Below are positions 2,301 through 62,300 of a DNA stretch of 64,000 nucleotides, one piece after another. The stretch is from Octopus bimaculoides. Its lineage: Eukaryota. Where the stretch lies: contig NC_068999.1 in assembly GCF_001194135.2 (NCBI RefSeq), positions 52,202,959-52,266,958 of the forward strand, given 5' to 3'. The notes beneath the pieces were generated by a model that was not told the origin of the DNA, did no database searches, and worked only from the letters and a program-made list of their open reading frames with translations. Every line of letters begins with the position of its first letter. The first letter of the stretch is position 1. The translations under genes and the position numbers were made by a program.

Positions 2301-2575
2301 TTATATCTTCGAAACGTCTAGTTAGAATAGAGGCAGCTGATGAATAATTCCAAGTGGCTTTCTGTTTTCCTATGTGTTTGTTCCATTGTCTGTAGTTCAT
2401 TGTTNNNNNNNNNNCTATGTGTTTGTTCCATTGTCTGTAGTTCATTGTTCTAACGTCCTGTACCCTGATATGCATCTATATACACATGTAGATGTAAGTA
2501 TATACATATATGTGTGTAAACATGCATATATATTTGTTGTATTATATATATATATATATATTGGTAAAAAATTAA

Positions 2576-8107: not shown

Positions 8108-8146
<39 letters not shown>

Positions 8147-32474: not shown

Positions 32475-35400
32475 GTGGTGAGCTGGCAGAATCGTCAGCA
32501 TGCCGGACACATTCCGAGTTCAAATTTCGCCAAGGTTGACTTCGCCTTTTATCTTTTCGGGCTTCATAAATTAAGTACCAGTGAAACACTGGGGTCAATG
32601 TAATCAACTAATCCCCTCCCCCAAAACTTCAGACCTTTTCTCTATAATAGAAAGGATTATTATTATTATTATTTCTATTTGACTTGCTCTGGTTAATTCT
32701 GTAAGCGTGGTCAACAACTTGTCAAGGGTCTCACTCCACAATATTTAAGACCCAAATATCAATTTCAAAATCTTCACGGTCTCCTATGAACCAATTTTCT
32801 GAGCACCTTAATAAAGTGGTTTTCTTAGCCTCACTGTCTCCAACAAAGTAACTTTCTGAGCCTCGCTATCCCCTATTATTATTATTATGATGATAAATGT
32901 GAAAATATTGGAGTGGTAGAAATAGAACACCAAATTGTCTTTCAGATACAACTACTAGTCGTGTACTGATGTTATTTCAATTGGCTACCCTCCTTTTGTA
33001 TAAGGTTGTGACAATCAATGTGCTTCTGTAATTATAGATATTACTTGTGCTATTATGATGCACACAATATAATGTATTATCAATTTTTGTTTATATGGAA
33101 TGTTATGCTACTCCTGTAACAACACAGACTTGTTGAAAGGAGCTTTATGTTCATTTCATCCATTTAAACAATGTTCATCTTAAGCCCCCCCCCCCCACTT
33201 AATTTTACTTTGTAATTATCTATCTTTGAAACTGAGAAAATGTTTGCATTTGCTGTTTCTTAAAGCGACATTATTTTTGCATCTATTCCTGTTTAGATGG
33301 ATGAGAAAAGGAGATTGGAGGAGGCTTCACAGTTGATACCCCTAGGAGGCTGCAAAGGTTACAAAGAAAAACACCCCAGTCAAGCACCTGCAGTCCGTCT
33401 CTGCAACACTTCTGAGGAAGAACTAGATAAGGAAACTGTCCGCATTCTCCTGGCTCGTCAAAAGCTGAAAGCAAAAAATGAGAAATGTAATAAACCAGGT
33501 TTGTAATCAGATATGGACTTTGATAATCTGTGTAAAATTTGTCTCCAATGGGAATTTATCGAGCTGTTCCTCACACTAAACACTGTCTAGGCCTTGTGAG
33601 TGTGCTCTGTTCCTTAACCCTAACCAAAGACAAGCCATGTTGCCTATCAGAGGTTGGTCTCACTGGTTAGTTAAGAAAGACTCTCTCTCAGGTTCACTCT
33701 GCATATCCCATGCGTTATATTTAATCTTATTTCACTTCAGCTGCTATATTGTAATTGTTGAGTATCATGGTATTCCTATCGTTCATTTATTTTTATAACT
33801 AAATACATCAAAATCATTTAAAGAAAATGGTAGAGATATTTTGATATTCATGTATGTTTGTCACTTCAGCAATTAATAAACAACTATTCACTTTTTTTTC
33901 CCTCCCTTCTTTCAAGCTTATTATTTGGTAGTTTGTTAAATAATATGCTTAACTAAAGAAAGAAACAATAGAGAACCCAACAATATCCATTTTAAACATG
34001 ATTCCTGACCAGAAAATATAGAATAGAGATGATTGTTGGCAAAAAGTAATTTTCAAAAATGAAATCTTGTATCTTAGTTGGGTCATTTTAACAAAAAGAA
34101 ACAAATACACTGGATTCTATTTGATTTCTTTTTATCATCATTTTTTATTATTAATGTGGCAGGCTGGTAGAATCGTTAGCACACCAGGAAAAATGCTTAG
34201 TGGCATTTTATCCATCTGTATATTCAGAGTTCAAATTCCACTGAGGTTGACTTTGCCTTTCATCCTTTTGGGGTTGATGAAAAAGTACCAGTTGTGTACT
34301 GGGGTCAATGTGATTGACTAGCACCCTTCCCCAAAATTCCAGGCTTTATGGCACTGGTAGAATCATTAGCACATTGGGGAAAATGCTTAGTGGTTTTTCT
34401 TTCAGTGTCCTTAAAATTGCTGGCCTTGTGCCAAAATTTCTAGGAATTATTATTGGTAAATAATTAATCAATTAATTGTTTGATTAATTGTTTGATCCTC
34501 ATCAATAACATGACCTCATTACTCCAGGTTTGTCTCATCTCCAACATAAATGGCAGTGAAAGAACTGTGACAAATGGGCTGATTGATTGATTAATCAAGC
34601 AGTTGATTAGTCTACTGGTTGACTAAGTTGACTAATAATAAAAACAAATGAAATATAACCAGTGTGTGTACTTGTGTGTTTATTGACAAAATGATTCGCT
34701 AAACAGCTGTTTCAACACAGGATTTTTCAACACATCAAGAATTTTGCGAAATGAATATAAAAACAAAAATATTAAATCTTGGATCTTGGATTTAAAAAAA
34801 AAACTTAACCTTTGTCTTGAATTAATAATTACATTATCTTGTAGCTTTGGGATTTTGACAATGTGATTGCTTATCTTTAGAAGGTTGATGTAGGATTGGT
34901 GTGAGAGGCTGGATCTGGTTGGTTTGAATGTATAACAGTTAGAATATTTGAGCTAGATATGGCCAGTTTAACCCTTAAGCATTTAGATTACTCTGTCTAA
35001 TGTAATGCTTGTTTATTTACATTGTTTTGAATTAATCATGAATTATCTTATAGCTTTGAGATTTTAATATGATTGTTTATTTTTAGAATGACATTGTAGG
35101 GTAGGTGTGAGATGCTGGATCTGACCAGTTTGAACATAAGAGGCAGAACATTTTGGCTGAATATGGCCGGTTTAAATACTAAAGAGTTAAAGAGAAAGGA
35201 AAGATAAAAATCAGACTTTTCTTTTCATTTTTGATTTGTAAATTTAGACAACTTTAGTTGATCTTGTCTGGTATTTTTCTTTTCCTTTCTATTTTTTTAT
35301 TTTATTTCTATGCCTAGGTTGCCGGTATGGCTGTATCTGTCACTTGTGTTGGATTTCAGAGAATAATGAAGAATTAACTAAGCCTTGTGCAATTTCTACT

Positions 35401-38400
35401 AAGGCCTGTGATAAAGAATATTGCCGTTTAGGTTGCATCTGTGATAACAATGAAAATACGAAGTTGAAAGTAGACTGTGCTAAACCTTGTTGTGAGTTGA
35501 CCTGTTGCTGTGATTCCCCCACTAAGAACTTGCCAACCGAGTCCAATAAATCAAGCCCCCCTAAAAATTTAGATTGCAACAAGACCGATACTGCCAAGAG
35601 TCCATTGACATCACCTGTATCTAACGAGTGTGTCGATGAAAATTCTTGTTCTTCTGTGCAAGACAAAGACAAGCTAACTTCTGCTGACGATACACCGTCG
35701 AACAAAGAGGATACCAATTCCAACAAAAGCAAACTTCCCAAGAAGGACAAATATGCTTCGCTTCCCAGACGGCAAATGACTCATCGAACAGCCAAGAATT
35801 TAGATGCTATCAGCAGAAAAGCAATGATGTTTTATGAAACAAGTGAAATGTATCATTTGAAAAAAAAGAGGAATGTTAGTATCTTCCTGAATTTCTTTCC
35901 ATCTATTCTTTCAATTTCCTCTGTTGGAATTTGAAACACTTAAAGGGTTGTTATTAAGTTTACTAGGGTTGAGCTAAGCAATTCATTTGTAACTATTTCA
36001 CTTTGTATCACTATTTCTTTCACATCATTCCTTTTAGAAATCTGAAAAATTTGTGTCACCGTCTTTATCATCATTGTTTTAACATCCACTCATCCATGTT
36101 TGTATGGGTAGGACAATTACCAAATCATATCCTATAACATTTATCAATGTGCTAATATTGACAAATTGTTTAGCCTTTTAGCTTGGGTCATTCACTCCTT
36201 AGAGTTTGCTGTTTTTAAAAAAACATAATTGCTAATTGAAATATGATGTTATTTAAATGCTATATTGAGTGACAATACATTTGGTCTCTTTTTCTCATAT
36301 TTATATCATATGACATCATTATAATAGATCAACATTATTCATAATTTAGCTTTCAAATCAGAGGGGTTTGAGCCCTGTGGTCTTTTAAAATTACTTAATG
36401 TTACTTCAGTAAGGAAATCTTGGCACTTTTATAAACATAAACTGTATTTGAACTCCCATATTTATCATCATCATCATTTGATGTCCATGTTCCAAGCTGG
36501 CATGGGTTGGATAGTTTGCCAAGGATCCAGTGAGCTAAGGACTGCATCATACTCCAGTGTCTGCTTTGGAATGGTTTCTACGGTTGGATGTCCTTCCTTG
36601 TGCCAATCACTTTACAGAGTGGACTGCGGGCTCTTTCCATGCCACTATTGAGGTCATTATGCAGCTCACAAGTCAACAAACCCAGAAAGGGAGTATGTTG
36701 CCTCACTTTATGGTAGATGGGGGTTAAAAGTGTGAAGGAAGAGGGTTAGAATAGAGCAGGTTCTTGCTGTAGAGGAGCTACATGGCTACTCACATTTAGG
36801 AAAGTGAGTGAGAATGAATTAGAAGTATCTCCAAAGAGGTAGACAGTAGTGATGAGATGTCCCGTTGGCGGGTAGAGGGAAATGGAGGTTTGAAAGAGTG
36901 TGTGGTGGGGAAGAGGAGATAGGCAACATCTGTAAAGATTGAGGGGACGGGGTGCATGAGTTGGAGAGGTTACAGGGATACTAGGAAAATGGTAGGAATG
37001 GTAGCTTGACAGTGGCGAGAAGAGAAAAGAGAGCTATATATTGTGTTTGTGTAGGCTGCTGGTGCAGACTAGAGAGTGCCAAGATTAGATAGACGAAGTA
37101 CCTGACATGTCAATTTTTCAGTTATGTTGTGGCTGTTCAACTTAAATGGACCATTTAAAAATATGTTAAACTTAAATCATTGAGTAGAAACAAATGGCTA
37201 GTAGAAAAAGCACCAAACTTTGGTTTCATTTGCTGCTCTGCATATTAATTCTTCTTTCCTAACAAAACAGCTATTTCCTTGAACAGCGACAGGTATGTTA
37301 AGTAATAAACTAGGTTTTCAACTGTGTTCTCATATACAATTAGAATGTATTTTAATTTTCCTAATTCACTTGGCAAAGACATGTACATTACATTATATCT
37401 CTCTTTCAACTAGAAACCATGGGGTTCTTACCTACATAAAAAATAATTAACTTTGCCAGAATGATTTTCCTTTCCTTACTTGGCTTATTTTTATCAAGTT
37501 ATATTGAATATGACATTATTATTCAATATATTTGTAAATAATATCATTCAGTTTACTGCATAATAAACATAATGTCATTATTTAATTGGTGGACCAAGCA
37601 TTTCTTGGTAACCCTAATACATGGCTTCCATTCCTCTCTGTCTTTCAGGATGGCACATTTAAGCTCTTGAATAGTGCATCCTATGTCTTTTAGTATTCTC
37701 TACCCTGTTTACCACGACAAGGTTTCCACAGAAAAATATTACCAAGCACTAACAAATAAATCTTAGTCGGTGTTTTTGTACTGTCTCCGTGATAGTCACG
37801 TGTTTAGGGTAAATATAAATAAAATGAAATATATTAATTACTGTCTCCATGATAGTCACGTGTTTAGGGTAAATATAAATAAAATGAAATATATTAAATA
37901 CTGTCTCCGTGATAGTCACGTGTTTAGGGTAAATATAAATAAAATGAAATATATTGAATACTGTCTCCGTGATAGTCACGTGTTTATGGTAAATATAAAT
38001 AAAATGAAATATATTAAATACTGTCTCCGTGATAGTCACGTGTTTAGGGTAAATATAAATAAAATGAAATATATTGAATACTGTCTCGTCACATATTGAA
38101 TGTATAAAAATTGATTTTAAAAGAATATTTACCCTTCACATTAATTAATTACATAATATTTAATGACCAGAGGTAGAGAAAGAAGGCAATAGGAGTTATT
38201 TTTGCCATTCACAAATATATTCGCTGTGTTAAGTGAAATGGCAATGACAAACATCAAACCGAGATCATGCAATCAATTTGTGAGGAACTCACCACCTTTG
38301 TTTAGTGAATAAAGCATTATTAGATATCTTGAATAAAACGAGTGTTAATATATTGGATAAAGCATCAGATATGGTATTGGATATGATATGAAATATAGTA

Positions 38401-50711: not shown

Positions 50712-53700
50712 CTACCTATTAGTTTAATTATTCTAAGTAAAATAGTTAAAAAGAAAGTAGCTGCCACTCCATTTATTAAATGTATGCTTTGTAATAGAGT
50801 TGCTATTCAGTTTTGAAGCCCCTCTTCCAGCAGTTCATACAAATTTTGATTTCACAAAACATACTTATTTTTCATACATGAATTTGTATCACTTTGTATC
50901 TCTTATTTGTGACTTGTAGAACTCCTTTATATACCTTGTAAATTTACAATGTTTTTGTTTCTTTTTAATAATCTTCAGATTGACAATCTAAGTTACAAGA
51001 ATGATTCAGGAAACAGTTCAGCTACATCAGTGCCAAATGGCGTATATTTGGATGTTCATTGTTATGAAGACATAGTTGCTGATGATGAAGGATACCACAA
51101 TGCTTGCAACTCTAGTGTAAGTCTCTGGAATAATCTTCCATGTAACATCTCCAAATTTCATTAAGTAAAAGAAGAAAAAAAATATATCTATGTGTCTGTG
51201 TTTGTCCCATACCACCACTTAACAACTGGTCTTGGTGATCCTACATCCCTGTTACTTAGCAGTTTGGCAAAAGAAAGTGATAGAACAAGTTCCAGGCTTT
51301 AAAAAACAAGCCCCGGGGTTGATTCATTCCACTAAAATTCTTCAAGGTGGTGCCCCAGCATGGCCACCGGTTAATGGCTGAAACAAAAGATGAAAAAAAC
51401 TGGTTGTATGGTTGAGAAGCTTGCTTCCCAACAAGTCCAGTCACACTGTACAACACATTGTGCAAATGTCTTCTATTATAGCCCCAGGCCATCCAAAATT
51501 TTTATAGGTTGCTTTGGTAGGCACCAACAGGAAGAAGCTCATTGTGCATGCATGTGTGTGTGTGTGTACCCTTGTCTTGACATCATTTGATGGTTGCAAA
51601 TGAGCATCACCATTATACAAACAATGTTGTTCATTTTTAGTTTTCCATGAAAAACATGTCTGACCATGGAGGAAATATTATCTTACTTGGAAATGAGACA
51701 GAATTGGTGACAAGAAAGGAAACAAAATGAAGAATATATGCCTTAACAACTCCATCCGACCCATGCAAACATGGAAAAATGAATGTTAAAATGATAATTA
51801 TGATTATTTGTTATTTAATAATTAATAATAAGGATTACCATTAATAATTATGTAACTGTTCTCTTTAATTTTCCAGTCCACAAAAGACAAGAGAAACAGC
51901 AAAAGGTTCAGGAATGATATCCAGCGTTCACGTCATATGTCTCGGTTGGTGATATTTCCTCTTTTATGAAAAATTTTTTTGGTTTAAACCGAATTATTGC
52001 AACAACTCAATACCAGTAATACATAAAGGTTGTCAGACTTTTACATTAACTCGCAGTAGATTGGTTCATAGACATATGGTAAAAACATTGATGTGCTTAT
52101 AAATATAGGCAAATCATCATCATCATCATTTAACGTCTGCTTTCCATGCTAGCATGGGTTGGACGATTTGACTGAGGACTGGCAAGCCAGAAGGTTGCAC
52201 CAGGCTCCAATCTGATCTGGCAGAGTTTCTACAGCTGGATGCCCTTCCCAACGCCAACCACTCCGAGAGTGTAGTGGGTGCTTTTTACGTGCCACCGGCA
52301 CGAGGGCCAGTCTGGCGATACTGGCAACGGCCACGCTCAAATGGTGTTTTTACATGTCACCTGCACGGGAGCCAGTCCAGCGGCACTGGCAACGACCTCG
52401 CTTGAGTGTTTTTTCACGTGCAACCGGCATAAGTGCCAGTAAGGCGATGCTGGTAACAATCACGTTTGAAAGGTGCTTTTTATATGCCACCAGTCAGCTG
52501 CTCTGGCAATGATCATGTTCGGATGGTGCTCTTAGTGCTCCACTGGCACAGGTGCCAGTCATCGAATTTGTGAATTTGATTTGATTTTGGTATATATATT
52601 TAAGTGTGTATGTAGGTGCAGACATGGCTGTGTGGCCAGAAGCTTGCTTTCCAACCACATGGTTCTAGGTTCAGTCCTTCTGTGTGACATCTTGAGCAAG
52701 TGACTTCTATTATAACCTCAGGATGACCAAAGCCTTGTGAGTGGATTTGGTAGTCGGAAACTGAAAGAAGCCCGTTGTATATATGTATATATTTATGCGT
52801 ATGTGTCTTTGTGTTTGTCCACCCAATAAAAGAATGTATGGATGTGCATGTGTGTGTATGCACATCTATGCATATTTATACATGATTGTTCACAATTGTA
52901 TAGCTATCATGTTTTTCTATGGTCATAATCTATTCTACAGTTATTCTTCCAATCCTGTTCTCCTATGCTGGATCAAGATGTTATAAAAATTAAAGGGAAT
53001 TAAGATGTTCAAACTGGCCAGGTTCAGCCTCTCACACCAACCCTGTATAATAGCATTCTGAAAATGAACAATCACATAATCAAAATCTCGAAGCTACAAG
53101 ATAATGTATGATTAATTCAAAGCAATGTGAATGAATAAGCATTACATTTGATAGAATGCTACAGGGTTAAACCAACCATATCTAGCCTAAATATTCTAGT
53201 TGTTTATATTCAAATCAGTCAGATCTGGCCTTAGACACACCTTCCCTACAATGTCATTCTAAAAATAGACAATTGCATCATTGAAACTTTGAAGCTACAA
53301 GATAGTGTATGATTAATTTAGAATAATGTGAATAAAGAAGAATTATATTTGACAAAAAAAAAATGAATGCTAAAGGGTTAAAGAAATATTTTTGTCATTT
53401 TCATCAGAGAAAGGGAACGTCGTCTTCAAATACTGAGCAAAATGACCATATTACAGTTGGTAGTGTATGAAAATGATCCAGAGAATAGGAATAAGATTCT
53501 TCCAAAGCAAGTTATTTTGGATACAGTAAGTATGTTTGCAACTTAGGTTTGCTTCAACTTTAGCACACTGTAGGTGCATCATGTCACCACATGAGTTTTC
53601 TCTCCTGTTGTAGCAGAGCAGTGGCAGGAAAAACAATTCTAAAGAAAATGCACTGTGCTAAAGGTTAAACAGCGCCCCCTTTCCCACCAAAATAATTGTG

Positions 53701-55899
53701 CTCTGTACAAGCAGACAGCAATTGTTTAAGAGTACCCAGTCATCATCATCATCATTGTTTAACATCCACCTTCCATGCTGGCATGAGTTGGACGGTTTGA
53801 CAGGAACCGGCACCAGACTCCAGTCTGTTTTGGCAGGGTTTTTACGGCTGGATGCCCTTCCTAACATCAACCGCCCAGCAAAGTGGACTGAGTGCTTTTT
53901 ATGTGGCACAAGCACAGGTGAGGTCAGTTTAGGCAAGGTTTTTACTGCTGGATGCCCTTCCAAATGCCAACCACTTTACTGTGTGGACTGTATGTATGGA
54001 AATAAAGAAAAAAAAAATATATAGAAATGGATCTTGGTTATAGTTTCTGACTATAAGTGTTAAGATATTCAAAAAAATTATACAAGGCAAATTGAATAAG
54101 CATGTAAGTAGTTGAGTATTCTATGGACATATATACCTTTTAATGTAATTCTTGGGGGTAGAATTAAGTATACTGTAACTAGGCTGTGCCTTTGAATTCC
54201 AAGTACAGTACATCGAATGAGCTTCTACACAGTTATCACCTATGCAATTTCACTTACTAAGTATGGGTCAACCCAAGTTCAAAGAAAATGACAATTGCTC
54301 ATCATGCTATGAAGTGGGATTGAACATGTGACCTTGTGACTGTGAATTGATCTTAATTGTTTAACCAACTGTGCCTACAAGTTTCACTTTATGAATTCAT
54401 GCAAATAGAGTTGGCCTTATTTGGTCTTGTTAAACTAAATCACTTAAATTGACCTGTTTATCTCCTTTGTTATTGGGGTTATTTGAACAATTTTTTTCTT
54501 ATTACTGTATATCTCCTCATATATCTTAGTGCAACGTTCTCTTATCAGAGAGATCTCAATGTTCTCAGATTTCACTTTTTTACCAACAAGTCCGGTTACT
54601 CTTAGTCCGCATTTATCATCCATTTGCTTTACATGTCCATAACATTGTAGCCAGCCATGTGTAACCATACATGGACAAAGACATGCTTGCGATTGGTATG
54701 ATATTTTTATCAGGAGCTGAGTATATTTTGGTTTTATAAAACATGAATAGACAGTAATAACTAGTTGTGAATAGAGAAAAGATTTCCATAAAGGATTGAT
54801 ATTATTAACAAAAATAGGAATAAATGAATAATAGCACATGTCCAATAAATGAAAACTGATTTAGCTTTTTATTTTGACAGGCAATAGAACTCGTCCATTC
54901 CTTAAAGATTGGTGAAGATTATTTAGTATCAGTGATAAGTTCTTTGTATACAAAAAATGACTTTCTCTGGGAGAAGTTATCAAAAGTTAAAGGTAATTAT
55001 TTTCCCTTCACTTTTGAATTCATTAAAATCTTTTTAATCAAGTGTTGAAGCATATCTATAAATTTTGGCAATCATATATCTGTGAGTGTATGTATGCTCT
55101 ATTTGCATAGCTACAAAGTGTTTTTAAAATTTGTATACATGCTAATTGTTGAGGCAGGAGCAAATTATATTATTGATGGGGATTTCTTATGAAATTTTCT
55201 CAGTGAAATCTGATAGATGCAAACTGTGTGTTAGCCTATAGGTGAAAAATGGTTGAGAAACACTGTTCTAAGTTTAGACCTTATTGGGTCCACTTTGCTT
55301 TCCACTTTTCTACAGTCAATAACAAATACCATTCATATGTTGGTCTCTGTTCATATTCCTTCCTTATCAATGTTTTTTTTTTCAAACTTTATTGAAGTGT
55401 GTTGTTCTTTTTTTAAACAGGAGAATTATATGAAATTGGTTACGTCGAATCAGAGATCAATAAAATTCTTGATGATGCTGGCTTACCATTTGACATGTAC
55501 AAACCTCCAGTGATATCTACGGCACAGACGTATGAAGACATGGGATCTCCTCTCAAGTTTGTTCCATCAAATCATCCCTCAACTTTCGAATGTCAGATCA
55601 TTTCTGACGAAGACTGTGAAGTCGATGTGGTCTCAGAGACTACAACAGTTCCCCAGAAGCAAATTCTGATTGCACAGTCTCACCAATCTACACCAAACTG
55701 CAACGAGCCCATTAGTAATGACGACGATGTAATTATACTATCGCCACAATGGGATACAGAAGAGAAAATATCAGACGTCGACACTACTTCCTCCACTCTT
55801 ATGATTGATAGTGTTTACAGCCTGGCTCCAGAAAACTACGAGAACTTCAGTACTTCATATAACATCACTGATGATACACAGATCATCCAACTGGATTAA
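2897..55899 (+). CDS. MGA: MGA-like bHLH-leucine zipper transcription factor (MAX dimerization partner), 16 coding exons, about 2783 aa, no T-box seen
   Basis: Manual splicing: all 15 introns are GT-AG and phase-compatible, and the CDS sums to 8352 nt (multiple of 3) ending in TAA. Motifs resemble vertebrate MGA as I recall it: EVDGILFMSFPSEESL, SSELDRYLAGE, CDKEYCRLGCIC, and basic region RSRHMSRERERR (H-x3-E-x3-R) followed by helix-loop-helix and a heptad zipper. Orthology is from motif recall, not a database search. Confidence 0.88.
3488..3711 (-). mobile_element. SINE family C (ggcggtgagctggcagaa...gagttcaaattcc...ctggggtcgatgtaatc); other copies near 7350-7560, 9900-10100(-), 10150-10340(-), 24810-24970, 32473-32640, 34158-34350
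   Basis: Shared A/B-box-like head and body across the listed copies. Confidence 0.8.
5946..6160 (-). mobile_element. SINE family A partial copy
   Basis: Shares gtacccttaacgtagttctcgggg...ccattgtgcctcc with 21199..21584; has an internal deletion. Confidence 0.8.
7868..8074. mobile_element. piggyBac-type MITE (TTAA-CCCTTTAG...CTAAAGGG-TTAA, about 210-230 bp); other copies near 16787-17011, 17628-17844, 19064-19261, 19409-19601, 21802-21984, 31522-31749, 34805-35190 (two), 43370-43575, 53005-53381 (two), 60560-60758
   Basis: Terminal inverted repeats begin CCCT inside TTAA, the established piggyBac signature; the non-coding internal sequence is shared across at least 12 copies. Confidence 0.8.
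8883..9245 (+). mobile_element. tRNA-headed SINE, distinct family (related copy near 44596-44870)
   Basis: tgactcaatggttagagtg A-box-like and gtttgattcttggacc B-box-like motifs, followed by ttgtgttcttgagcaagacac, which is shared with the 44.6-kb copy. Confidence 0.6.
10487..15028 (+). CDS. MGA: MGA-like coding exon 2 (4542-nt giant exon)
   Basis: Poly-T tract plus ttacag acceptor at 10486 (phase 0), cct|gtaagt donor at 15029 (phase 0); lies inside the 1528-aa ORF and contains the ELDRYL and EVDGILFMSF motifs. Confidence 0.92.
17430..17590 (+). mobile_element. SINE family A 3' fragment
   Basis: ttaagggtacacgtgtctgtggagtgctcagccacttgca is shared with 58383-58420. Confidence 0.75.
18383..18449 (+). 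CDS. MGA: MGA-like coding exon 3 (VIEKSAHLLYQSDEMHAIRKLG)
   Basis: tttcttgcag acceptor and gag|gtaaat donor; 67 nt, phase 0 to 1, exactly bridging exons 2 and 4. Confidence 0.75.
19839..20089 (+). CDS. MGA: MGA-like coding exon 4 (EFELNEPSIRKRTRS...TQVDSV)
   Basis: tttgttgtag acceptor (phase 1) and gtg|gtatgt donor (phase 0); inside ORF 19811..20164. Confidence 0.85.
20773..20856. repeat. Perfect 42-bp tandem duplication
   Basis: gatacttcgaagagcaattctttttctaatactattattgaa occurs twice. Confidence 0.95.
21199..21584 (-). mobile_element. SINE family A copy, near full length
   Basis: Reverse complement of 58120..58513 over most of its length. Confidence 0.85.
23406..23501 (+). other. Candidate 96-nt cassette (poison) exon with an in-frame TGA at 23430-23432
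   Basis: tttcaatatctttctttag acceptor and cct|gtaagt consensus donor; phase 0/0 like flanking exons 4 and 5. Confidence 0.45.
26263..26371. repeat. 23-bp minisatellite (tatacttttcatcataaccacta), about 4.5 copies
   Basis: Direct inspection. Confidence 0.85.
28007..28845. mobile_element. Foldback/MITE-like element with about 340-370-bp inverted arms flanked by TA (Tc1/mariner-type target site)
   Basis: 28009..28376 is the reverse complement of 28508..28843 apart from several substitutions/indels and a 30-bp tandem duplication in the left arm; TA at 28007-28008 and 28844-28845; the centre contains a 74-N gap. Confidence 0.75.
29260..30090 (-). pseudogene. Decayed mariner-family transposase remnant
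   Basis: Minus-strand translation across stops and frameshifts gives LIVSEISKETGI...ILKEKL...HVAVEFVPCQL, then KVM..., LDVLRHLREAVQ and VLHHENTPA, matching the mariner HTH and catalytic-domain motifs (RRVAAKFVP, LHHDNAPAH). Confidence 0.75.
31950..32200 (-). pseudogene. Possible Penelope-like reverse transcriptase fragment
   Basis: Minus-strand KTINDGTPMGST resembles the RT motif Q..GT.MGSP; the surrounding sequence is heavily degenerate. Confidence 0.35.
33297..33498 (+). CDS. MGA: MGA-like coding exon 5 (MDEKRRLEE...EKCNKP)
   Basis: cctgtttag acceptor (phase 0) and ccag|gtttgt donor (phase 1); ORF 33297..33506. Confidence 0.85.
35318..35874 (+). CDS. MGA: MGA-like coding exon 6, Cys-rich MGA conserved domain (GCRYGCIC...CRLGCIC...CCELTCCC)
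   Basis: tttctatgcctag acceptor (phase 1) and aat|gttagt donor (phase 0). CDKEYCRLGCIC resembles vertebrate MGA CNNDFCRLGCVC (recalled). Confidence 0.92.
37780..38087. repeat. 60-bp minisatellite, 5 full units plus a partial unit, each with GTCACGTG
   Basis: Unit actgtctccgtgatagtcacgtgtttagggtaaatataaataaaatgaaatatattaaat is visible at a 60-nt period with 1-2 variants per unit. Confidence 0.97.
39814..39891 (+). CDS. MGA: MGA-like coding exon 7 (QSSLRSHVAGSRRKFSCKSTKSVQGK)
   Basis: Polypyrimidine tract plus ccag acceptor, aag|gtaatg donor; 78 nt, phase 0/0, open frame. Confidence 0.75.
41281..41330 (+). CDS. MGA: MGA-like coding exon 8 (ASGSEKENSKSSTPFKR)
   Basis: cttgcttcag acceptor and acg|gtatac donor; 50 nt, phase 0 to 2, which the phase-2 acceptor of exon 9 requires. 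Confidence 0.78.
43050..43269 (+). CDS. MGA: MGA-like coding exon 9 (TYSLRGSSSR...EDTENY)
   Basis: tgttcttag acceptor (phase 2) and tat|gtacgt donor (phase 0); inside ORF 42904..43320. Confidence 0.82.
44075..44383 (+). CDS. MGA: MGA-like coding exon 10 (NVGNKELQ...SEAGNE)
   Basis: ggttttag acceptor and gag|gtaatt donor; phase 0/0; inside ORF 44138..44542. Confidence 0.85.
46990..47700 (-). pseudogene. Decayed Penelope-like retroelement, C-terminal/GIY-YIG-side remnant
   Basis: Minus-strand peptides LIWFTPSVSLNVQSNIARNFL...NKHF...SC..NI and RSEIFTKCDHFIKYLL resemble Penelope-like motifs IIWFNPP..NV.TNIG..FL...KHF and RSE..SKCRH..K.LL (recalled); many stops. Confidence 0.6.
48628..49503 (+). 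CDS. MGA: MGA-like coding exon 11 (KIKSEYKRTMKIRSRK...IKYKH), Ser/Asn-rich
   Basis: ttttgtag acceptor and cat|gtgagt donor; phase 0/0; 300-aa ORF 48655..49557. Confidence 0.88.
50979..51116 (+). CDS. MGA: MGA-like coding exon 12 (IDNLSYK...ACNSS)
   Basis: atcttcag acceptor and agt|gtaagt donor; phase 0/0. Confidence 0.83.
51877..51944 (+). CDS. MGA: MGA-like coding exon 13, start of the bHLH basic region (STKDKRNSKRFRNDIQRSRHMSR)
   Basis: ttttccag acceptor and tcg|gttggt donor (phase 2); joins exon 14 to give RSRHMSRERERR. Confidence 0.85.
52114..52560 (+). mobile_element. Interspersed repeat family D ((cat)n-tttaacgtc...ccatgctagcatgggttgga...ggatgcccttcc); other copies near 19270-19405(-), 36465-36650, 45015-45200, 45880-46175(-), 47935-48100(-), 53740-53990
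   Basis: Recurrent shared segments in both orientations; probably a SINE read antisense with a (GAT)n tail. Confidence 0.75.
53408..53525 (+). CDS. MGA: MGA-like coding exon 14, basic region, helix 1 and loop (ERERRLQILSKMTILQLVV...PKQVILDT)
   Basis: ttttcatcag acceptor (phase 2) and aca|gtaagt donor (phase 0); contains the K-x-x-I-L helix-2 signature. Not in the ORF track. Confidence 0.9.
54881..54992 (+). CDS. MGA: MGA-like coding exon 15, helix 2 plus leucine zipper (AIELVHSLKIGEDYLVSVISSLYTKNDFLWEKLSKVK)
   Basis: ttttgacag acceptor (phase 0) and aag|gtaatt donor (phase 1); heptad L8-L15-L22-L29-V36. Confidence 0.9.
55421..55899 (+). CDS. MGA: MGA-like terminal coding exon 16 (GELYEIG...EVDVVSE...IIQLD*)
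   Basis: ttttaaacag acceptor (phase 1), in frame with ORF 55495..55899, TAA stop. Confidence 0.87.
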
Positions 55900-56804
55900 A
55901 TTTTCTATGCATTGGCCCACTGTTGAGTGACTTTTTCCAAATTTTACATTTAGTGTGTGAATAAGGAATAACAGCTTGCATATGTATAACATACACAAGC
56001 ACAAACCAAAAAGTAGAATATTAACTGACCGAATATAAAACATGCCACTGCATTCTGTCATTCTTAAGAAGTCATAATATTGTAACAATTTGACATCTCT
56101 CCTTGATTATATATATATATATATATATNNNNNNNNNNNNNNNNNNNNNNNNNNNNNNNNNNNNNNNNNNNNNNNNNNNNNNNNNNNNNNNNNNNNNNNN
56201 NNNNNNNNNNNNNNNNNNNNNNNNNNNNNNNNNNNNNNNNNNNNNNNNNNNNNNNNNNNNNNNNNNNNNNNNNNNNNNNNNNNNNNNNNNNNNNNNNNNN
56301 NNNNNNNNNNNNNNNNNNNNNNNNNNNNNNNNNNNNNNNNNNNNNNNNNNNNNNNNNNNNNNNNNNNNNNNNNNNNNNNNNNNNNNNNNNNNNNNNNNNN
56401 NNNNNNNNNNNNNNNNNNNNNNNNNNNAACAGCAGGTTACAACCACTTTCATCAACTCGTAACTCGCATTCATCCAAGTCATTAACATTAAACTAATTGT
56501 GTTAATTGTAAATTAAAAGTAAAAGAAACTAAAACGATAAAACAGAATGCAAACAATTTTATTTTAATTGTTTTGATTTAAGAGGTTATTTTTCGTAGTT
56601 CTGTTTTTTTTTTTCTAAGTAAATATTTTTAATGTGGATCTGGCAGCAATATAATGAATGGATAAACTGTTAACTACTTGTTAAAAGACCCTTTATCATT
56701 GTTTACTCCTCAAAAATGCTGTTAATAATATGAACTTTTTACTCATCAAATTCTTTGTTGCTATAAAAACTACTCTATTGTTATACACAACACCTCAAGG
56801 ATTG

Positions 56805-57186: not shown

Positions 57187-58119
57187 GTTTACAGTTTCAA
57201 TCGGGAAACTTCAACAACATATACAGCAGTAGTATATACTGTAATTTATTAGCAAGAAACGTTTGTTAAATTATAAAAAAAACAAAGCAAAATATTTCTT
57301 TTAGCTGTTGTCTTTTATTATTTCAATAAGTACTTGGAAGTTTCAAATATAGGAGGCTTGTAAAAAAACAGAAAATTCCATGACCTGCAGTTATTTTCAA
57401 TGGATCTGAGTTAATCTTTGACAATAATGCTGGATTGTGGTTGATGTTCTAGTGAAACTAAACCCCCCCCCCCCCCCCNNNNNNNNNNNNNNNNNNNNNN
57501 NNNNNNNNNNNNNACCTTATAATATCAGAATGCACCATCAGTAGAGTTTTAGGATCAGTTTCTGTCCTTACATCTTATGTTCCAGTTGCTAAAATATACC
57601 TCCTCCTCTTGCTACTGTTACAACCACCACCACCTCTTTGCTTTCCTCTTTCTCTGTTCCTCCTTTTGGCATGTAATCACTTGTTCAGCTTTTCAACAGA
57701 AGTCATTCTCTCTCTCTGTCTCTCAAATACCAGTAATTTCTGGTTGTAAATGCTAGAGTAGATATACAAGGCTCTGATAATAATTGTCTGGCATCAAGCA
57801 TAATGAACTATTATTCATGCAAGAATTGCTTTTGGTTTAAAATGTCTACTTAGGATTCCTTTTATCTTTTATAACTTGAATTCTCTCATCTAACAAATTC
57901 TTTTTTTTTTTTTTCAATCCCAGGAAAAATAAATATGGCAGCTATCTTTGTTTTCAGCTTCAATTTGAAAAACTGAAAACAAATTAAAAAATCAATACTT
58001 TAATGTTATTCATCTACATTTTAGAAAATGGAAATATCTTCAAATTAATAATACATCATTCTTCATCGATTCATTTTCTTAGATTTGATATTTCTCTTCT
58101 TTATACTCAATTAATATGT

Positions 58120-58513
58120 GGAGGCGCAATGGCTCAGTGGTTAGGGCAGCGGACTCGTGGTCGTAGGATCGCAGTTTCGATTCCCAGACCAGGCGCTGTG
58201 AGTGTTTATTGAGCGAAAACACCTAAAGCTCCATGAGGCTCTGGCAGGGGATGGTGGCGACCCCTGCTGTACTCTTCCACCACAACTTTCTCTCACTCTT
58301 ACTTCCTGTTTCTGTTGTGCCTGTAATTCAAAGGGTCAGCCTTGTCACACTGTGTCACGCTGAATATCCCCGAGAACTACGTTAAGGGTACACGTGTCTG
58401 TGGAGTGCTCAGCCACTTGCACGTTGATTTCACGAGCAGGCTGTTCCGTTGATCGGATCAACTGGAACCCTCGACGTCGTAAGCGACGGAGTGCCAACAA
58501 CAACAACAACAAC
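58120..58513 (+). mobile_element. Full-length tRNA-derived SINE (family A) with (CAA)n tail
   Basis: Pol III A box tggctcagtgg (58130-58140), B-box-like gtttcgattcc (58174-58184), body shared with other copies, (caa)n tail. Resembles octopus tRNA-derived SINEs; family name not verified. Confidence 0.85.
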
Positions 58514-58964
58514 TCTATTAATATAATGAAAGGAAATGGAGAGATGGACACTGGTGAGTATTGGACAAAATACTTCACTATTTTAAAATATTATCTCTCA
58601 ACTCTGTTCTGATTTGAGTATCTTTAATATGTCCAGACCAGTAAAATATCAGTAATATATAATGAGTGAAAGGAAATGAATATTGGTAACGGTGATTGTT
58701 AACACCATAAAGCAGAGTTAAGCTCTCTCTATGAAGTGAAGAACTGTTGACTGAATAGGCAGTGAAATTAAGTGTAAATACAACAAATAGGAAGGGTGAA
58801 ATAACATGTAGCAGTACCTCTCTTTATATATATATATACATACACACATACATATATACAGTGATTTAAAAATCATTTCAAAACAACATTTTATCTTAGG
58901 CAATTCTGTGTAATATTAAAAGTGATACCATAAACAATGGTCGTAATTAATATTTATAGTTCCA

Positions 58965-59397
58965 TTACTCTTAGTCAGCATTTATCATCCATTTGCTTTA
59001 CATGTCCATAACATTGTAGCCAGCCATGTGTAACCATACATGGACAAAGACATGTTTGCGATTGGTATGATATTTTTATCAGGAGCTGAGTATATTTTGG
59101 TTTTATAAAACATGAATAGACAGTAATAACTAGTTGTGAATAGAGAAAAGATTTCCATAAAGGATTGATATTATTAACAAAAATAGGAATAAATGAATAA
59201 TAGCACATGTCCAATAAATGAAAACTGATTTAGCTTTTTATTTTGACAGGCAATAGAACTCGTCCATTCCTTAAAGATTGGTGAAGATAATTTAGTGTCA
59301 CTGATAAGTTGTTTGTATACAAAAAATGACTTTCTCTGGGAGAAGTTATCAAAAGTTAAAGGTAATTATTTTCCCTTCACTTTTGAATTCATTAAAA
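58965..59397 (+). repeat. 433-bp direct duplicate of 54596..55028, including a complete copy of exon 15 (59250..59361) with intact AG/GT sites
   Basis: Manual alignment: offset 4369 nt, 6 substitutions, no indels; ORF-track entries 54444..54845 and 58975..59214 are also near-identical. Confidence 0.95.
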
Positions 59398-62300
59398 CAA
59401 TTAGTAAAAAAAAAAAAAATTTTTCAGGTAGTTTTTGTGAATTGTGGTTTAGATGAAAACGAAGAAAGACTTACAAATTATAGTTTTGCAGTGTAATAAT
59501 AACCTGAGGTGTTGTAAACGTTGAAATAAGATTTACAATGCATGTTGATTAATCTACATTTATGTTTATGCACCACATGCCAACTTCTAATGGTCATAAA
59601 TTATTTTGAATCATTTGTCTTCAAATAGTGATTTAAAATTATGAAAATAGTTGGTCCTAAAAAAGAAACACACACACACAAAAGTACATCAAACTCCTCC
59701 CTCCTCACTTTCCTGCAACATTAATCATCACTTTTCACATCTCCCACCATTCCTTAACAAAGTAGCGTCTTCTTTGCTCTCTCCATACGAATTCAAGGCT
59801 TAGTATGTTTAAGAAGGCAACATTAATTAATGTAATTTGACATGAATGATCAATATATTTCGTGAAAATTTTGTGTATTTAGGCATATCCCCATTTCTCT
59901 ATGTATGTAACAAGTTTTTGGTGTCCAGAGTTAAATTACATTTACCTGTTCCTCCCAAACTATTGTAGCATTTGTAGAAAGATGTGTAATTTTCTGACAG
60001 CTTTTATAACTCACCTTGTTCCAGGTGCCATTTAGCTAATTAACAACATTGATTATTCATGACACTATCAACCATTCTTATGTTATTGCTGCTGCCTTAA
60101 GTCCGAAAACTCATGCTCTTGTAAATAATTTATTTCTCCTAAGTCCATGTGTTGTCAGCTCTTCTTGTATGAGCTTAAATAGACTAAATGTGAGAATCTT
60201 GATGTAATTTCTGTAAGGGCCTCCTTTTTTTAAAAAAATTAACTCGCAAAAACTCTTCTCCCATTAGGACATATTGTACAGAATTCTTCATATTACATAT
60301 TTCATTTCATTAGTTTCTGTTTGTAAAGATGTTTTGGTTTATCACAAATTTCAATGAGAAACAACAAACAGAAAGTCAGAGAATTAAATTTATTATTTTT
60401 GTATCATGAACCCTGTACATCATCCAGTTTACTCTTGGCAGGAGTTTACCCCTGATGCTCTCTTTTCCTGTTAACTAATTAATTTTTACTTTAATTAATT
60501 TTTTACTGTAGCTTAAGAACAACAAATTGCAAAATGGAGGGGCCTTTTTTGGCAAACTGAAATGTAATGCTTATTTTTTCTACATTATTTTGAATGGACT
60601 GTGCATTATCTTGTAACTTCAAGATTTTGACAATGTAATTGTTTGTTTTTAAAATGACATTGTAGGATAGGTGTGAGAGGCTGGATCAGGCCAGTTTGAG
60701 CATAAAATAGGTAGAATGTTTCGGCCAAATATGACCGGCTTAGATACTAAAGGGTTAAACATATGCTTAGAATTTTCATTTTGTATTTTTTTTTTAATTA
60801 CTCGATTAAGTAAATTACATTAATGAATTCACTGCCTCGGTTTAATACACTATGAAATAGTTCATGGTTGAGTGATTTAGTTTCAGAAGTTATATCCAAT
60901 CAGGAATGACAAGTTTTATAATTGTTTGAGCAAGTTTTGTTCTCTTTAAAGGATTTGTGTTCAGTTTTACAAGCTAACAAAACACTCGAGATAGACAACA
61001 CTATCAGTATTTTAGCCATTGAACTAATAATCCTTTAAATTTCAGACAACTGTGGCTTCTGTAGCCATGGAACTTCTGTGCTGGCATTTTGAGTTAAATG
61101 CTTGAATTTCCAGGCTATCCGATCAATGCTAATCTGGGAAAAATAGATATAAATTTTTCTTTTTTTGTTTTGAATCTGTTGCCATTAATGGAAGATTTCA
61201 AACTTATGAATTATATACATATATATATATATTTAAAAACAAAACAATACAAAAAAAAATCAAACCAAACAGATCGTCTTATATTTCTATGTGGAATAGA
61301 AGCTCCTTCTGATGACTGAAATCTATTTTTTATCCTGAGTCTCATACTGATTCATTCCATTTGTAATTAGTATGGTCCTTATGACAAGCTTAAATGTTAA
61401 ACAGTCTCATCTTCCTCATTCATTTCAGCTTGGACATGTGTGCCCAGACTTTGCATATAATAGTGGAGTAGGAGGTGGGGAGCACCCAAGCACATCTTGC
61501 TAAAAAAAATCATTCTAATTTCTTGATAAACCTCTCAAATACAGCAGTCAAGTGTTGTTAGATTGTTGGACAAAAATGCCTTGTGGTATTTATTATGTTA
61601 TTATGGTTCTTTATGTGCTGAGGTTCACTTTGCTGTTCATCCTTCTGGGGATTAATAAACTAAAGTAACTGGAGTTAATTAAATTGACTATCTCCATCCT
61701 CCAAATTTCTGGCCTTGTGCTTATGTGTGTGTATATATATAAATTGTTCTTAGTTGTTTTGTTTATCCATTATAGAAATGTTTAACCTAATGTTCATAGA
61801 TTCAATGTATATATATATATATTTTAAAAATTNNNNNNNNNNAAAAAAAAAAATTGGGGGGAAGGGGGGGGGTCTGTGTGATATACCCCCTTTGCATTTT
61901 CAATTTAAAGATATATATTATCTGGCTGTAAACATGTTGAATAAGGATGGCATTGTTTTTGATTTGGTTTATTCTATGAATAAATATTGGAAATTCTTAT
62001 TTAGAACAGCCAAAAATATTGAGGTGGATGGGGAGTCTATATTACCTGATCTCTGTAATGGAAAGGTGAGGGGGGGGGGTGACAACTTTGGTAAATATTG
62101 TTTTCAAGTCTTCAATACCCAACAGTCCTCTTATTAGACACACACACCAAAACATGAAATAAACTATAAAAAATCTATGTAGTTGATTGTCTGGCTTTTC
62201 ATTCGATATGCATTCTATCTCTTTAAAGTTATTTTTTACTCGTTTCAGTCATTGGATTGCAGCCAGGCTAAGGCTCCATCTGGAAGAACCTTTTCTTTTT

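What the first reader, a model, noticed from the sequence alone, without database searches (positions are those of the whole stretch)
58965..59456. A second, variant copy of the helix2-leucine-zipper exon lies 3.3 kb downstream of the stop codon with intact splice sites
Seen: 54596..55028 is duplicated at 58965..59397 (433 bp, 6 substitutions, no indels), carrying the branch/acceptor region, the whole 112-nt exon (59250..59361) and the donor. Only 2 differences fall in the 285 nt of upstream intron, but 4 fall within about 22 nt of the exon and 3 change amino acids (EDYLVSVISSL to EDNLVSLISCL: Y14N, V18L, S21C). The heptad leucines 8/15/22/29 are untouched and V18L is at a g position. Established: e/g and a/d zipper positions set bHLHZ partner choice (MAX versus others). 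Inference: exon 14 (phase-0 donor 53526) could splice to 59250 instead of 54881, giving an alternative-last-exon isoform with a variant zipper that lacks the exon-16 tail (including EVDVVS). Read-through of the donor gives GNYFPFTFEFIKTISKKKKNFSGSFCELWFR* (stop 59454-59456). This would be a dimerization switch created by exon duplication. With only 6 differences the clustering could be chance.
Basis: partly seen in the sequence, partly recalled or inferred. Interest (0 to 1): 0.78.

Follow-up and report, generated by a model that had tools for sequence, protein, structure and literature searches.

The report
Stray duplicate of one MGA exon
A 433-base piece of a mollusc MAX-gene-associated (MGA-like) gene, carrying one leucine-zipper exon and its splice sites, is repeated almost exactly 3 kb past the end of the gene; it is most likely a recent, unused copy or an assembly error, not a new protein-partner switch.

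Summary
Window 54596-55028 recurs at 58965-59397: 433 nt, 6 substitutions, no indels, and flanks that are unrelated on both sides. The copy carries the whole 112-nt exon (59250-59361) with an identical acceptor and donor.

The gene is a 53-kb MGA-like gene on the + strand, about 2.9-55.9 kb. It is colinear with a 2995-aa cephalopod-type transcript product and related to gastropod proteins named MAX gene-associated protein. The duplicated exon encodes the end of helix 2 plus four zipper heptads of a divergent bHLHZ.

Four of the six differences lie within 23 nt (simulation P about 0.006), so the clustering is not chance. It still does not look like selection:
- Non-synonymous to synonymous is 3:1, the neutral expectation.
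- The changed residues sit at heptad positions c, g and c.
- All three changed sites vary between orthologues.

A genomic relative has one copy of this exon, and seven relative transcripts show one version.

An isoform using the copy would lose the conserved start of exon 16. Copy 2 lies in a 4.3-kb contig separated from exon 16 by two gaps. No transcripts or reads of this species could be reached.

Best reading: a recent DNA-level duplicate that is a neutral pseudo-exon (0.55). Rivals: assembly artefact (0.28), functional alternative last exon (0.07).

The parts
51877..51944 (+). Exon 13 of the MGA-like gene. It encodes the basic region ...KRFRNDIQRSRHMS(R) and ends in phase 2.
   Evidence: tblastn with the orthologue's basic region. 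The sequence shows acceptor ttttccag| and donor CG|GTTGGT. The frame was checked and the exon end set at 51944. It gives H-x3-E-R-x-R-R when joined to exon 14.
53408..53525 (+). Exon 14. It encodes (R)ERERR, helix 1, the loop and the start of helix 2, with a phase-0 donor GTAAGT at 53526.
   Evidence: The Pfam HLH match runs across the exon 13/14/15 joins.
54596..55028 (+). Source copy of the 433-nt block: 285 nt of intron 14, exon 15, and 36 nt of intron 15.
54881..54992 (+). Exon 15 (112 nt, 37 codons + 1 nt). It encodes the end of helix 2 and the zipper heptads: AIELVHSLKIGEDYLVSVISSLYTKNDFLWEKLSKVK.
   Evidence: The frame is continuous from exon 14 to 16. An orthologous exon with the same boundaries lies at L002 8020-8130, and P0001 matches it.
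55421..55899 (+). Exon 16 coding part: further heptads, the conserved GLPFDMY motif, an acidic tail, and stop TAA at 55897-55899.
56129..56427 (.). Assembly gap (299 N) between exon 16 and the duplicate. The contig before it ends in (TA)n.
57479..57513 (.). Assembly gap (35 N). The contig before it ends in a poly-C run. Copy 2 lies in the 4.3-kb contig 57514-61832, which ends at another gap (61833-61842).
58965..59397 (+). Duplicate block: 433 nt, 98.6% identical to the source, same orientation, sharp unrelated flanks.
   Evidence: There are no target-site duplications, no terminal inverted repeats and no RNA-family or tRNA hit.
59250..59361 (+). Exon 15 copy with Y14N, V16V (silent), V18L and S21C. 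Acceptor and donor are identical to the original.
59362..59456 (+). Read-through of the copied donor: (G)NYFPFTFEFIKTISKKKKNFSGSFCELWFR, then stop TGA at 59454-59456. It contains ATTAAA (59391-59396) and an A14 run (59406-59419).
   Evidence: AlphaFold2 gives pLDDT < 50 for this tail (low-confidence model).

Best explanation
A short piece of the MGA-like gene was copied at the DNA level, in the same orientation, into non-coding sequence about 3.1 kb downstream of the gene's stop codon. The piece comprises the last 285 nt of intron 14, exon 15, and the first 36 nt of intron 15. The event is recent (1.4% divergence).

The copy retains introns and lacks both target-site duplications and an abutting poly(A) tail. 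The likeliest route is therefore a template switch or break repair that copied nearby DNA (a templated insertion of the FoSTeS/MMBIR or synthesis-dependent repair type), not retroposition or a transposon.

The tight cluster of four substitutions is best read as one multi-nucleotide mutational event, either error-prone synthesis during the copying or a later complex mutation or conversion patch. It is not best read as selection on the zipper.

The copy lies beyond the terminal exon and beyond consensus poly(A) hexamers, so it is rarely or never spliced into mRNA. It is a neutral pseudo-exon.

Shown: the duplicate, its boundaries, the gene identity, the heptad positions, and single copy in relatives. 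Inferred: the mechanism of origin, the single-event origin of the cluster, and the lack of use.
For: - The block is sharp: 433 nt, 6 mismatches, no indels, unrelated flanks.
- Only exon 15 is duplicated, not exons 14 or 16.
- Introns are retained. There is no TSD, no TIR, and no other copy in the window.
- Clustering has P about 0.006, yet replacements to silent changes are 3:1 against a 72%:21% neutral expectation.
- The changes fall at positions c, g and c, and at sites that vary among orthologues.
- The genomic relative L002 has a single exon 15, and seven transcripts of the other relative carry one version joined to exon 16.
- AATAAA or ATTAAA hexamers lie at 56487, 56512, 57181 and 57928, between the stop codon and the copy.
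- The gaps flanking the intervening contigs sit at (TA)n, poly-C and poly-A runs. This is the usual reason for short-read contig breaks, and it fits correct local order.
- SINE copies of 94-98% identity in the same window show that sequence of similar age is common here.
Against: - No reads, long-read assembly or transcripts of this species could be reached, so neither reality nor non-use is shown directly.
- Both splice sites, the polypyrimidine tract and the reading frame are intact. This is expected for so young a copy, but it also allows use.
- Cephalopod 3' UTRs can be long (own knowledge), so transcription through the copy is not excluded.
- The same window contains artefact-like duplicates at gaps.
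Confidence: 0.55

Rival explanations
1. Assembly artefact. The genome has one copy. Copy 2 would then be the other haplotype or a mis-assembled or gap-filled segment, or the 4.3-kb contig that carries it belongs elsewhere and was pulled next to the gene by read pairs mapping to the shared 433 nt.
For: - Copy 2 lies in a small contig (57514-61832) bounded by gaps on both sides, and two gaps separate it from exon 16.
- The window has other artefact-like duplicates. One is a 35-nt exact repeat on both sides of the 10-N gap at 2405-2414. Another is a 97%-identical inverted 312-nt repeat whose right arm starts exactly at the edge of gap 28434-28507.
- Divergence of 1.4% with a tight cluster of SNPs could be a divergent haplotype.
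Against: - Neither end of copy 2 abuts a gap; the nearest is 1.45 kb away.
- Both junctions run into unique, unrelated sequence with no shared k-mer that could cause a graph mis-join. A haplotig would share its flanks.
- The three well-separated variant positions or groups would form separate bubbles, not one 433-nt block.
- If the contig is merely misplaced, the second copy still exists somewhere in the genome.
Confidence: 0.28
2. Functional alternative terminal exon. Exon 14 splices to 59250 instead of 54881. This gives an MGA-like isoform with a variant, shortened zipper and no exon-16 tail, changing dimer partner or strength or acting as a dominant negative.
For: - Acceptor, donor, phase and open frame are intact.
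- The substitutions cluster inside the zipper-coding part (P about 0.006), and none makes a stop.
- An ATTAAA hexamer follows the exon.
- In mouse, Mga does use alternative splicing around its bHLHZ as a regulatory device: a germ-cell variant lacking the bHLHZ acts as a dominant negative on PRC1.6 (PMC8102552).
Against: - The changes are at c, g and c positions and are conservative or at variable sites.
- 3:1 is the neutral ratio.
- An identical acceptor lies 4.4 kb nearer to the exon-14 donor and would be met first.
- Exon 16 and consensus poly(A) hexamers lie in between.
- The only nearby hexamer after the copy (59391) would cleave before the stop codon at 59454, inside or next to an A14 run. 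That would give a non-stop message.
- The isoform loses the conserved GLPFDMY segment and further heptads.
- The read-through tail contains Pro and is modelled with pLDDT < 50.
- Relatives have one copy and one isoform.
- Functional tandem-duplicated exon substitutions are overwhelmingly ancient (PMC9741552).
Confidence: 0.07
3. RNA-mediated or transposon-mediated capture. A fragment of unspliced pre-mRNA was reverse-transcribed and inserted, or the block was carried by a mobile element. It may be part of another transcript, such as a lncRNA.
For: - An A14 run lies 8 nt after the end of the copy, and the block ends 2 nt after an ATTAAA hexamer.
- A young tRNA-headed SINE lies 450 nt upstream at 58119-58516, with 94-98% identical copies elsewhere in the window, so retro-elements are active in this genome.
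Against: - There are no target-site duplications.
- The A run does not abut the copy. The 8 nt between them (CAATTAGT) match nothing downstream of copy 1.
- There are no terminal inverted repeats and no further copies in 64 kb.
- There are no convincing ORFs or RNA-family hits downstream.
Confidence: 0.07

Closest known systems
Tandem exon duplication giving mutually exclusive or substituted homologous exons (Kondrashov & Koonin type; reviewed in PMC9013439 and PMC9741552)
   Same: A single internal coding exon is duplicated in the same orientation within a few kb, with its splice sites. Length and phase are identical, and there are a few conservative replacements.
   Different: The copy is not between the same flanking exons. 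It lies beyond the terminal exon and the stop codon, so it cannot substitute for exon 15 and could only act as a new last exon. It is very young (1.4% divergence) and absent from the relatives examined, whereas functional cases are mostly ancient. No transcript evidence is available.
Mouse germ-cell Mga splice variant lacking the bHLHZ (PMC8102552)
   Same: It is the same gene family, and the bHLHZ end of the protein is altered by alternative exon use as a regulatory device.
   Different: The mouse variant inserts a new exon 19a with a premature stop upstream of the bHLHZ and removes the domain. Here the hypothetical isoform would keep a slightly altered, shortened zipper. The mouse case is shown experimentally; this one is not.
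Templated insertions and small segmental duplications from break repair or replication template switching (FoSTeS/MMBIR; named from own knowledge)
   Same: A few hundred bp are copied from a site a few kb away, introns included. The junctions are sharp, with no TSD and at most a few bases of microhomology. A cluster of mutations fits error-prone synthesis.
   Different: The mechanism is inferred from what is absent. No pre-insertion site or polymorphism data are available to confirm it.
Uncollapsed or misplaced duplicates in short-read scaffolded assemblies
   Same: There is near-identical local duplication in a gapped scaffold, the contig carrying it is small and flanked by gaps, and other gap-associated duplicates occur in the window.
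   Different: The duplicate does not touch a gap, and its flanks are unique and unrelated to those of copy 1.

Membership tests
bHLHZ transcription factors (Myc/Max/Mxd/MGA network) | Basic region with the E-box contact pattern H-x3-E-R-x-R-R directly before helix 1 | tested here: met
   Exons 13 and 14 give RSRHMSRERERRLQIL. The orthologue P0001 has AHKTRERERRCTIF.
bHLHZ transcription factors (Myc/Max/Mxd/MGA network) | Pfam HLH (PF00010) match at or above the gathering score | tested here: not met
   The score is 15.9 bits (E 0.011), covering profile positions 1-52 of 53, against a cut-off of 20.7. The orthologue P0001 scores 18.2 bits. The best PDB sequence match is the Myc bHLHZ, but E is 0.97. 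The domain is divergent and supported by pattern and context, not by score.
bHLHZ transcription factors (Myc/Max/Mxd/MGA network) | Heptad leucine repeat continuous with helix 2 | tested here: met
   The d positions are L8, L15, L22, L29 and V36, and the a positions are E12, I19, N26 and L33 of exon 15. I43, I50, L40 and L54 follow in exon 16. The d positions and N26 are conserved in P0001 and L002.
bHLHZ transcription factors (Myc/Max/Mxd/MGA network) | Fold of a bHLHZ dimer; dimerisation with MAX | not testable with these tools
   The single-sequence AlphaFold2 monomer is low-confidence (pLDDT 69), and Foldseek against the PDB gave only non-significant helical-bundle hits. Partner binding needs experiment.
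MGA (MAX gene-associated protein) | MGA conserved domain (PF16059) in the middle of a roughly 3000-aa protein | tested here: inconclusive
   The octopus-type exon 35248-35931 scores 18.4 bits, below the cut-off of 27. That region matches molluscan proteins at E 1e-22 to 4e-42. Two of these score 50-54 bits for PF16059, and two are named MAX gene-associated protein by their sources.
MGA (MAX gene-associated protein) | N-terminal T-box DNA-binding domain | tested here: not met
   There is no T-box hit at E <= 0.01 in the full-length orthologue P0001 or in P0002 and P0004. P0001 starts at the same exon 1 as the window gene. The window's small exons were not scanned one by one.
MGA (MAX gene-associated protein) | bHLHZ located C-terminal to the MGA domain | tested here: met
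   The order is colinear: MGA_dom exon at 35.3 kb and bHLHZ exons at 51.9-55.4 kb. The same order holds in P0001 (1637-1679, then 2776-2826).
Tandem-duplicated alternatively spliced (mutually exclusive) exons | Two homologous exons of the same length and phase with functional splice sites | tested here: met
   Both are 112 nt with identical acceptor and donor.
Tandem-duplicated alternatively spliced (mutually exclusive) exons | Both copies lie between the same upstream and downstream constitutive exons | tested here: not met
   Copy 2 is 3.35 kb past the stop codon of the terminal exon 16.
Tandem-duplicated alternatively spliced (mutually exclusive) exons | Both copies conserved in related species | tested here: not met
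   There is one copy in L002, with 10 kb downstream covered, and one version in seven transcripts of the P0001 cluster. These relatives are distant (about 40% identity), and no close relative was available.
Tandem-duplicated alternatively spliced (mutually exclusive) exons | Transcripts containing each copy | not testable with these tools
   No protein or contig of this species is in the searchable collections.
LINE-mediated retrocopy / class-1 templated insertion | Target-site duplications and a poly(A) tail abutting the 3' end | tested here: not met
   The flanks share no k-mer of 7 or more. The A14 run starts 8 nt after the end of homology. Introns are retained.

The most novel reading that the evidence does not exclude
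The copy is a newly born alternative last exon of an MGA-like gene. It would give a lineage-specific isoform with an altered, shortened zipper and no conserved C-terminal tail. That isoform would modulate or poison MAX/PRC1.6-type complexes, and it would have been caught within about 1% divergence of its origin, with its first substitutions concentrated in the zipper.
Probability: 0.06. Interest if true: 0.55.

Novelty: new member of a known kind. Interest (0 to 1): 0.2.

Why it matters
If real and unused, this is an ordinary young micro-duplication. It is useful mainly as a warning for gene annotators, because a gene predictor could wrongly extend or fork the MGA model, and as a small example of templated insertion with a mutation cluster.

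If it is an artefact, it flags local problems in the assembly.

Only if transcripts use it would it matter biologically. It would then be a very young case of exon duplication creating an alternative C-terminus in a MAX-network repressor, whose bHLHZ is a known regulatory target of splicing in mouse germ cells.

Tried and rejected
1. Word-indexed protein searches with the C-terminal 239 aa and with the 1516-aa giant exon returned nothing. The exhaustive representative search later found relatives sharing 7-mers, so those negatives reflect the tool, not absence.
2. Exact look-ups of two ORFs of this window (exon-16 ORF and giant-exon ORF) found no contig. No second assembly or transcript of this species could be reached, and the decisive test was not possible.
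3. Retroposition was rejected: no TSD, and the A run does not abut the copy.
4. A DNA transposon or Helitron-like carrier was rejected: no TIRs and no other copies.
5. An older, larger duplication with only the core kept similar was rejected: no residual flank homology.
6. A second copy of exon 14 or 16 downstream was not found.
7. Rfam and tRNA scans of 52-64 kb gave nothing.
8. Stop-free stretches downstream of the gene are all low-complexity.
9. Polarity of the three replacements could not be inferred from orthologues, because the sites are too variable.
10. AlphaFold2 single-sequence models were low-confidence, and Foldseek against the PDB gave meaningless helical-bundle hits.
11. I tried to use the 3' UTR length of the relative's transcript as a guide. 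The contig ends in CT-rich low complexity, so it is uninformative.
12. The species could not be verified. The relatives found are molluscs, and the closest are unnamed Logan and ENA contigs.
Full report
**1. Observation**

Reading the sequence and comparing it at offset 4369 shows that 54596-55028 and 58965-59397 are collinear over 433 nt. There are six substitutions and no indels, and identity drops to background immediately outside.

A self-blastn of the whole window finds this as the only match of either region. A sensitive search of the flanks (word size 7, plus local alignment against shuffles) finds no weaker extension.

Two differences lie in the 285 nt of intron (54608, 54686). Four lie in the exon (54920, 54928, 54932, 54942), within 23 nt. 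In 200,000 random placements of six differences on 433 nt, four fell within 23 nt in 0.6% of trials, and four or more fell in the exon in 4%. The duplicate is real in the sequence as given, and the clustering is more than chance under independent, uniform substitution.

**2. The gene**

Pfam gives only weak hits in the window:
- HLH scores 11-16 bits across the exon 13/14/15 joins.
- The MGA conserved domain scores 18 bits in the exon at 35248-35931.

The exhaustive representative search with these two regions found 46 proteins. The best, P0001, is 2995 aa with E 4e-42. It is the product of a 9.4-kb Logan transcript contig and maps colinearly onto the window from 2897 to 55782. The whole gene therefore lies in the window on the + strand.

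More distant hits are 2.5-3.6-kaa molluscan proteins. Two are named MAX gene-associated protein by their sources (Plakobranchus, Elysia). Others carry PF16059 at 50-54 bits. No T-box was detected in P0001, P0002 or P0004.

I located the basic-region exon at 51877-51944. With exon 14 it reads RSRHMS-R-ERERR, the H-x3-E-R-x-R-R pattern of E-box-binding bHLH proteins. P0001 has AHKTRERERR.

The C-terminal exons are:
- exon 13: 51877-51944
- exon 14: 53408-53525
- exon 15: 54881-54992
- exon 16: 55421-55899

All are in frame.

**3. The duplicated exon**

Exon 15 encodes AIELVHSLKIGEDYLVSVISSLYTKNDFLWEKLSKVK. A second relative, genomic contig L002 from an ENA assembly, has an exon with exactly the same 37-codon boundaries at 8020-8130. 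Its exon 16 lies 1.85 kb further on. The exon is therefore genuine and its structure is conserved.

The alignment is:
- copy 1: AIELVHSLKIGEDYLVSVISSLYTKNDFLWEKLSKVK
- copy 2: AIELVHSLKIGEDNLVSLISCLYTKNDFLWEKLSKVK
- P0001: AVDHIKSLHISQEELSTEKELLVQINHQLWEQLKRVK
- L002: ATNHIKSLQSAEESLCSEKTSLVNTNHQLWEQLNKVK

The conserved residues are the heptad d positions (L8, L15, L22, L29, V36), N26 at an a position, and LWE.L..VK. Using the alignment to the Myc bHLHZ for the register, the changed residues are 14 = c, 16 = e (silent), 18 = g and 21 = c.

**4. Does the pattern point to a new dimerisation specificity?**

It does not.
- Y14N and S21C are on the outer face.
- V18L is a conservative change at g.
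- No charge at e or g and no core residue changes.
- All three sites differ between the three species.
- For this exon, 72% of all possible single-base changes are replacements, 21% are silent and 7.5% make stops. The observed 3:1 is therefore what neutrality predicts.

Four substitutions within 23 nt, three of them transversions, fit one complex mutational event. Multi-nucleotide mutation and error-prone synthesis during break-induced or template-switch copying are established sources of such clusters (own knowledge). This is inference.

**5. Could it be spliced?**

The acceptor and donor are identical to the original, so it could be recognised if transcribed. Several features work against productive use:
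- It lies after the terminal exon.
- An identical acceptor lies 4.4 kb closer to the exon-14 donor.
- Consensus hexamers lie at 56487, 56512, 57181 and 57928 between the stop codon and the copy.
- After the copy, the only nearby hexamer (59391) would direct cleavage before the stop codon at 59454, next to a genomic A14 run.
- Splicing exon 15 to the copy would shift the frame, since each is 112 nt.

The isoform would also lack the start of exon 16. That stretch is the best-conserved part of the C-terminus (NK(I/M)LD..GLPFDMY) and continues the hydrophobic heptads. The read-through tail contains a proline and is modelled at pLDDT < 50, though both models are low-confidence.

In the relatives, one genomic copy and one transcript version are seen. 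These relatives are distant, so this only shows that the duplicate is not ancient.

**6. Origin**

The copy keeps intron sequence, so it is not a processed retrocopy. It has no target-site duplications. The A14 run starts 8 nt after homology ends, and those 8 nt match nothing at locus 1. There are no terminal inverted repeats. No other exon of the gene is duplicated.

A young tRNA-headed SINE lies 450 nt upstream, with 94-98% identical copies elsewhere in the window, but nothing links it to the block. A DNA-level templated insertion by template switching or break repair is the simplest mechanism. It is inferred, not shown.

**7. Assembly caveat**

Copy 2 lies in a 4.3-kb contig (57514-61832) bounded by gaps, and two gaps separate it from exon 16. 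The window holds two artefact-like duplicates at gaps:
- a 35-nt exact repeat on both sides of the 10-N gap at 2405-2414
- a 312-nt, 97%-identical inverted repeat whose right arm begins at the edge of gap 28434-28507

Against an artefact:
- Copy 2 touches no gap.
- Both of its junctions enter unique sequence.
- The contig breaks nearby sit at (TA)n, poly-C and poly-A runs, which suggests ordinary short-read breaks in correctly ordered sequence.

I put the artefact at about 0.28.

**8. What could not be done**

No protein, contig or transcript of this species is in the searchable collections. Read support, a second assembly, close sister species and RNA evidence were all out of reach. The species itself was not verified. 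The relatives are molluscs, and the nearest are unnamed contigs about 40% identical.

**9. Comparison with what is known**

In form this is a tandem exon duplication. It fails one defining feature of the mutually exclusive or substituted-exon class, because the copy is outside the exon chain. Known functional cases are also mostly ancient (PMC9741552; PMC9013439).

Regulation of MGA through splicing around the bHLHZ is known in mouse germ cells (PMC8102552).

**10. Verdict**

The anatomical interpretation is correct. The functional interpretation is unsupported and mildly disfavoured.

| Reading | Confidence |
|---|---|
| Recent neutral duplicate that is an unused pseudo-exon | 0.55 |
| Assembly artefact | 0.28 |
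| Functional alternative last exon | 0.07 |
| RNA- or mobile-element-mediated capture, or part of another transcript | 0.07 |

Interest is low (0.2). In kind, this is a new member of a known class.

Noticed in passing
window 28066-28376 and 28508-28816 (gap 28434-28507): A 312-nt inverted repeat, 97% identical, whose right arm starts exactly at the gap edge. It is either an assembly artefact (a fold-back contig end) or a real palindrome.
   Followed up: partly
window 2370-2404 and 2415-2449 (gap 2405-2414): An exact 35-nt repeat sits on both sides of a 10-N gap. This is the signature of two overlapping contig ends that were not merged.
   Followed up: partly
window 58119-58516 (+), 5948-6110, 21312-21472: A SINE-like element with a tRNA-like head (GGAGGCGCAATGGCTCAGTGGTTAGGG...) and an (AAC)n tail. 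Copies in the window are 94-98% identical, so the family is young. ARAGORN and Rfam do not call it.
   Followed up: partly
P0001, P0002, P0004 (relatives); window gene 2897-55899: The molluscan MGA-like proteins show the MGA domain and a C-terminal bHLHZ but no detectable T-box at Pfam E <= 0.01. Vertebrate MGA has one. The window's small exons were not scanned individually.
   Followed up: partly
window 55421-55530 (start of exon 16); L002 9977-10100: A short motif, E(I/L)NK(I/M)LD(D/E)xGLPFDMY(K/M/I)PP, is the best-conserved C-terminal element across the three cephalopod-type sequences. Its function is unknown.
   Followed up: no
window 10445-15037: A single giant coding exon with a stop-free stretch of 1531 codons. 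It is Ser/Asn/Thr-rich, with long N-rich low-complexity runs (about 13.5-14.0 kb), and is colinear with P0001 residues 225-1383.
   Followed up: partly
window 37752-38135: An intronic minisatellite of about 60-nt units, 97-98% identical between units. It appears as repeated ETVFNIFHFIYIYPKHVTIT in translation.
   Followed up: no
window 52113-52259 vs 53742-53872 and 53910-53972; 53005-53357 vs 60575-60675: There are further dispersed repeat families (67-85% identity) in introns 13 and 14 and downstream of the gene, in both orientations.
   Followed up: no
tool behaviour: The word-indexed protein search returned no hits for queries that share 7-residue words (GLPFDMY, GSPLKF) with P0001 and P0022, which are in the collection. 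Its negative results for this window should not be read as absence.
   Followed up: partly
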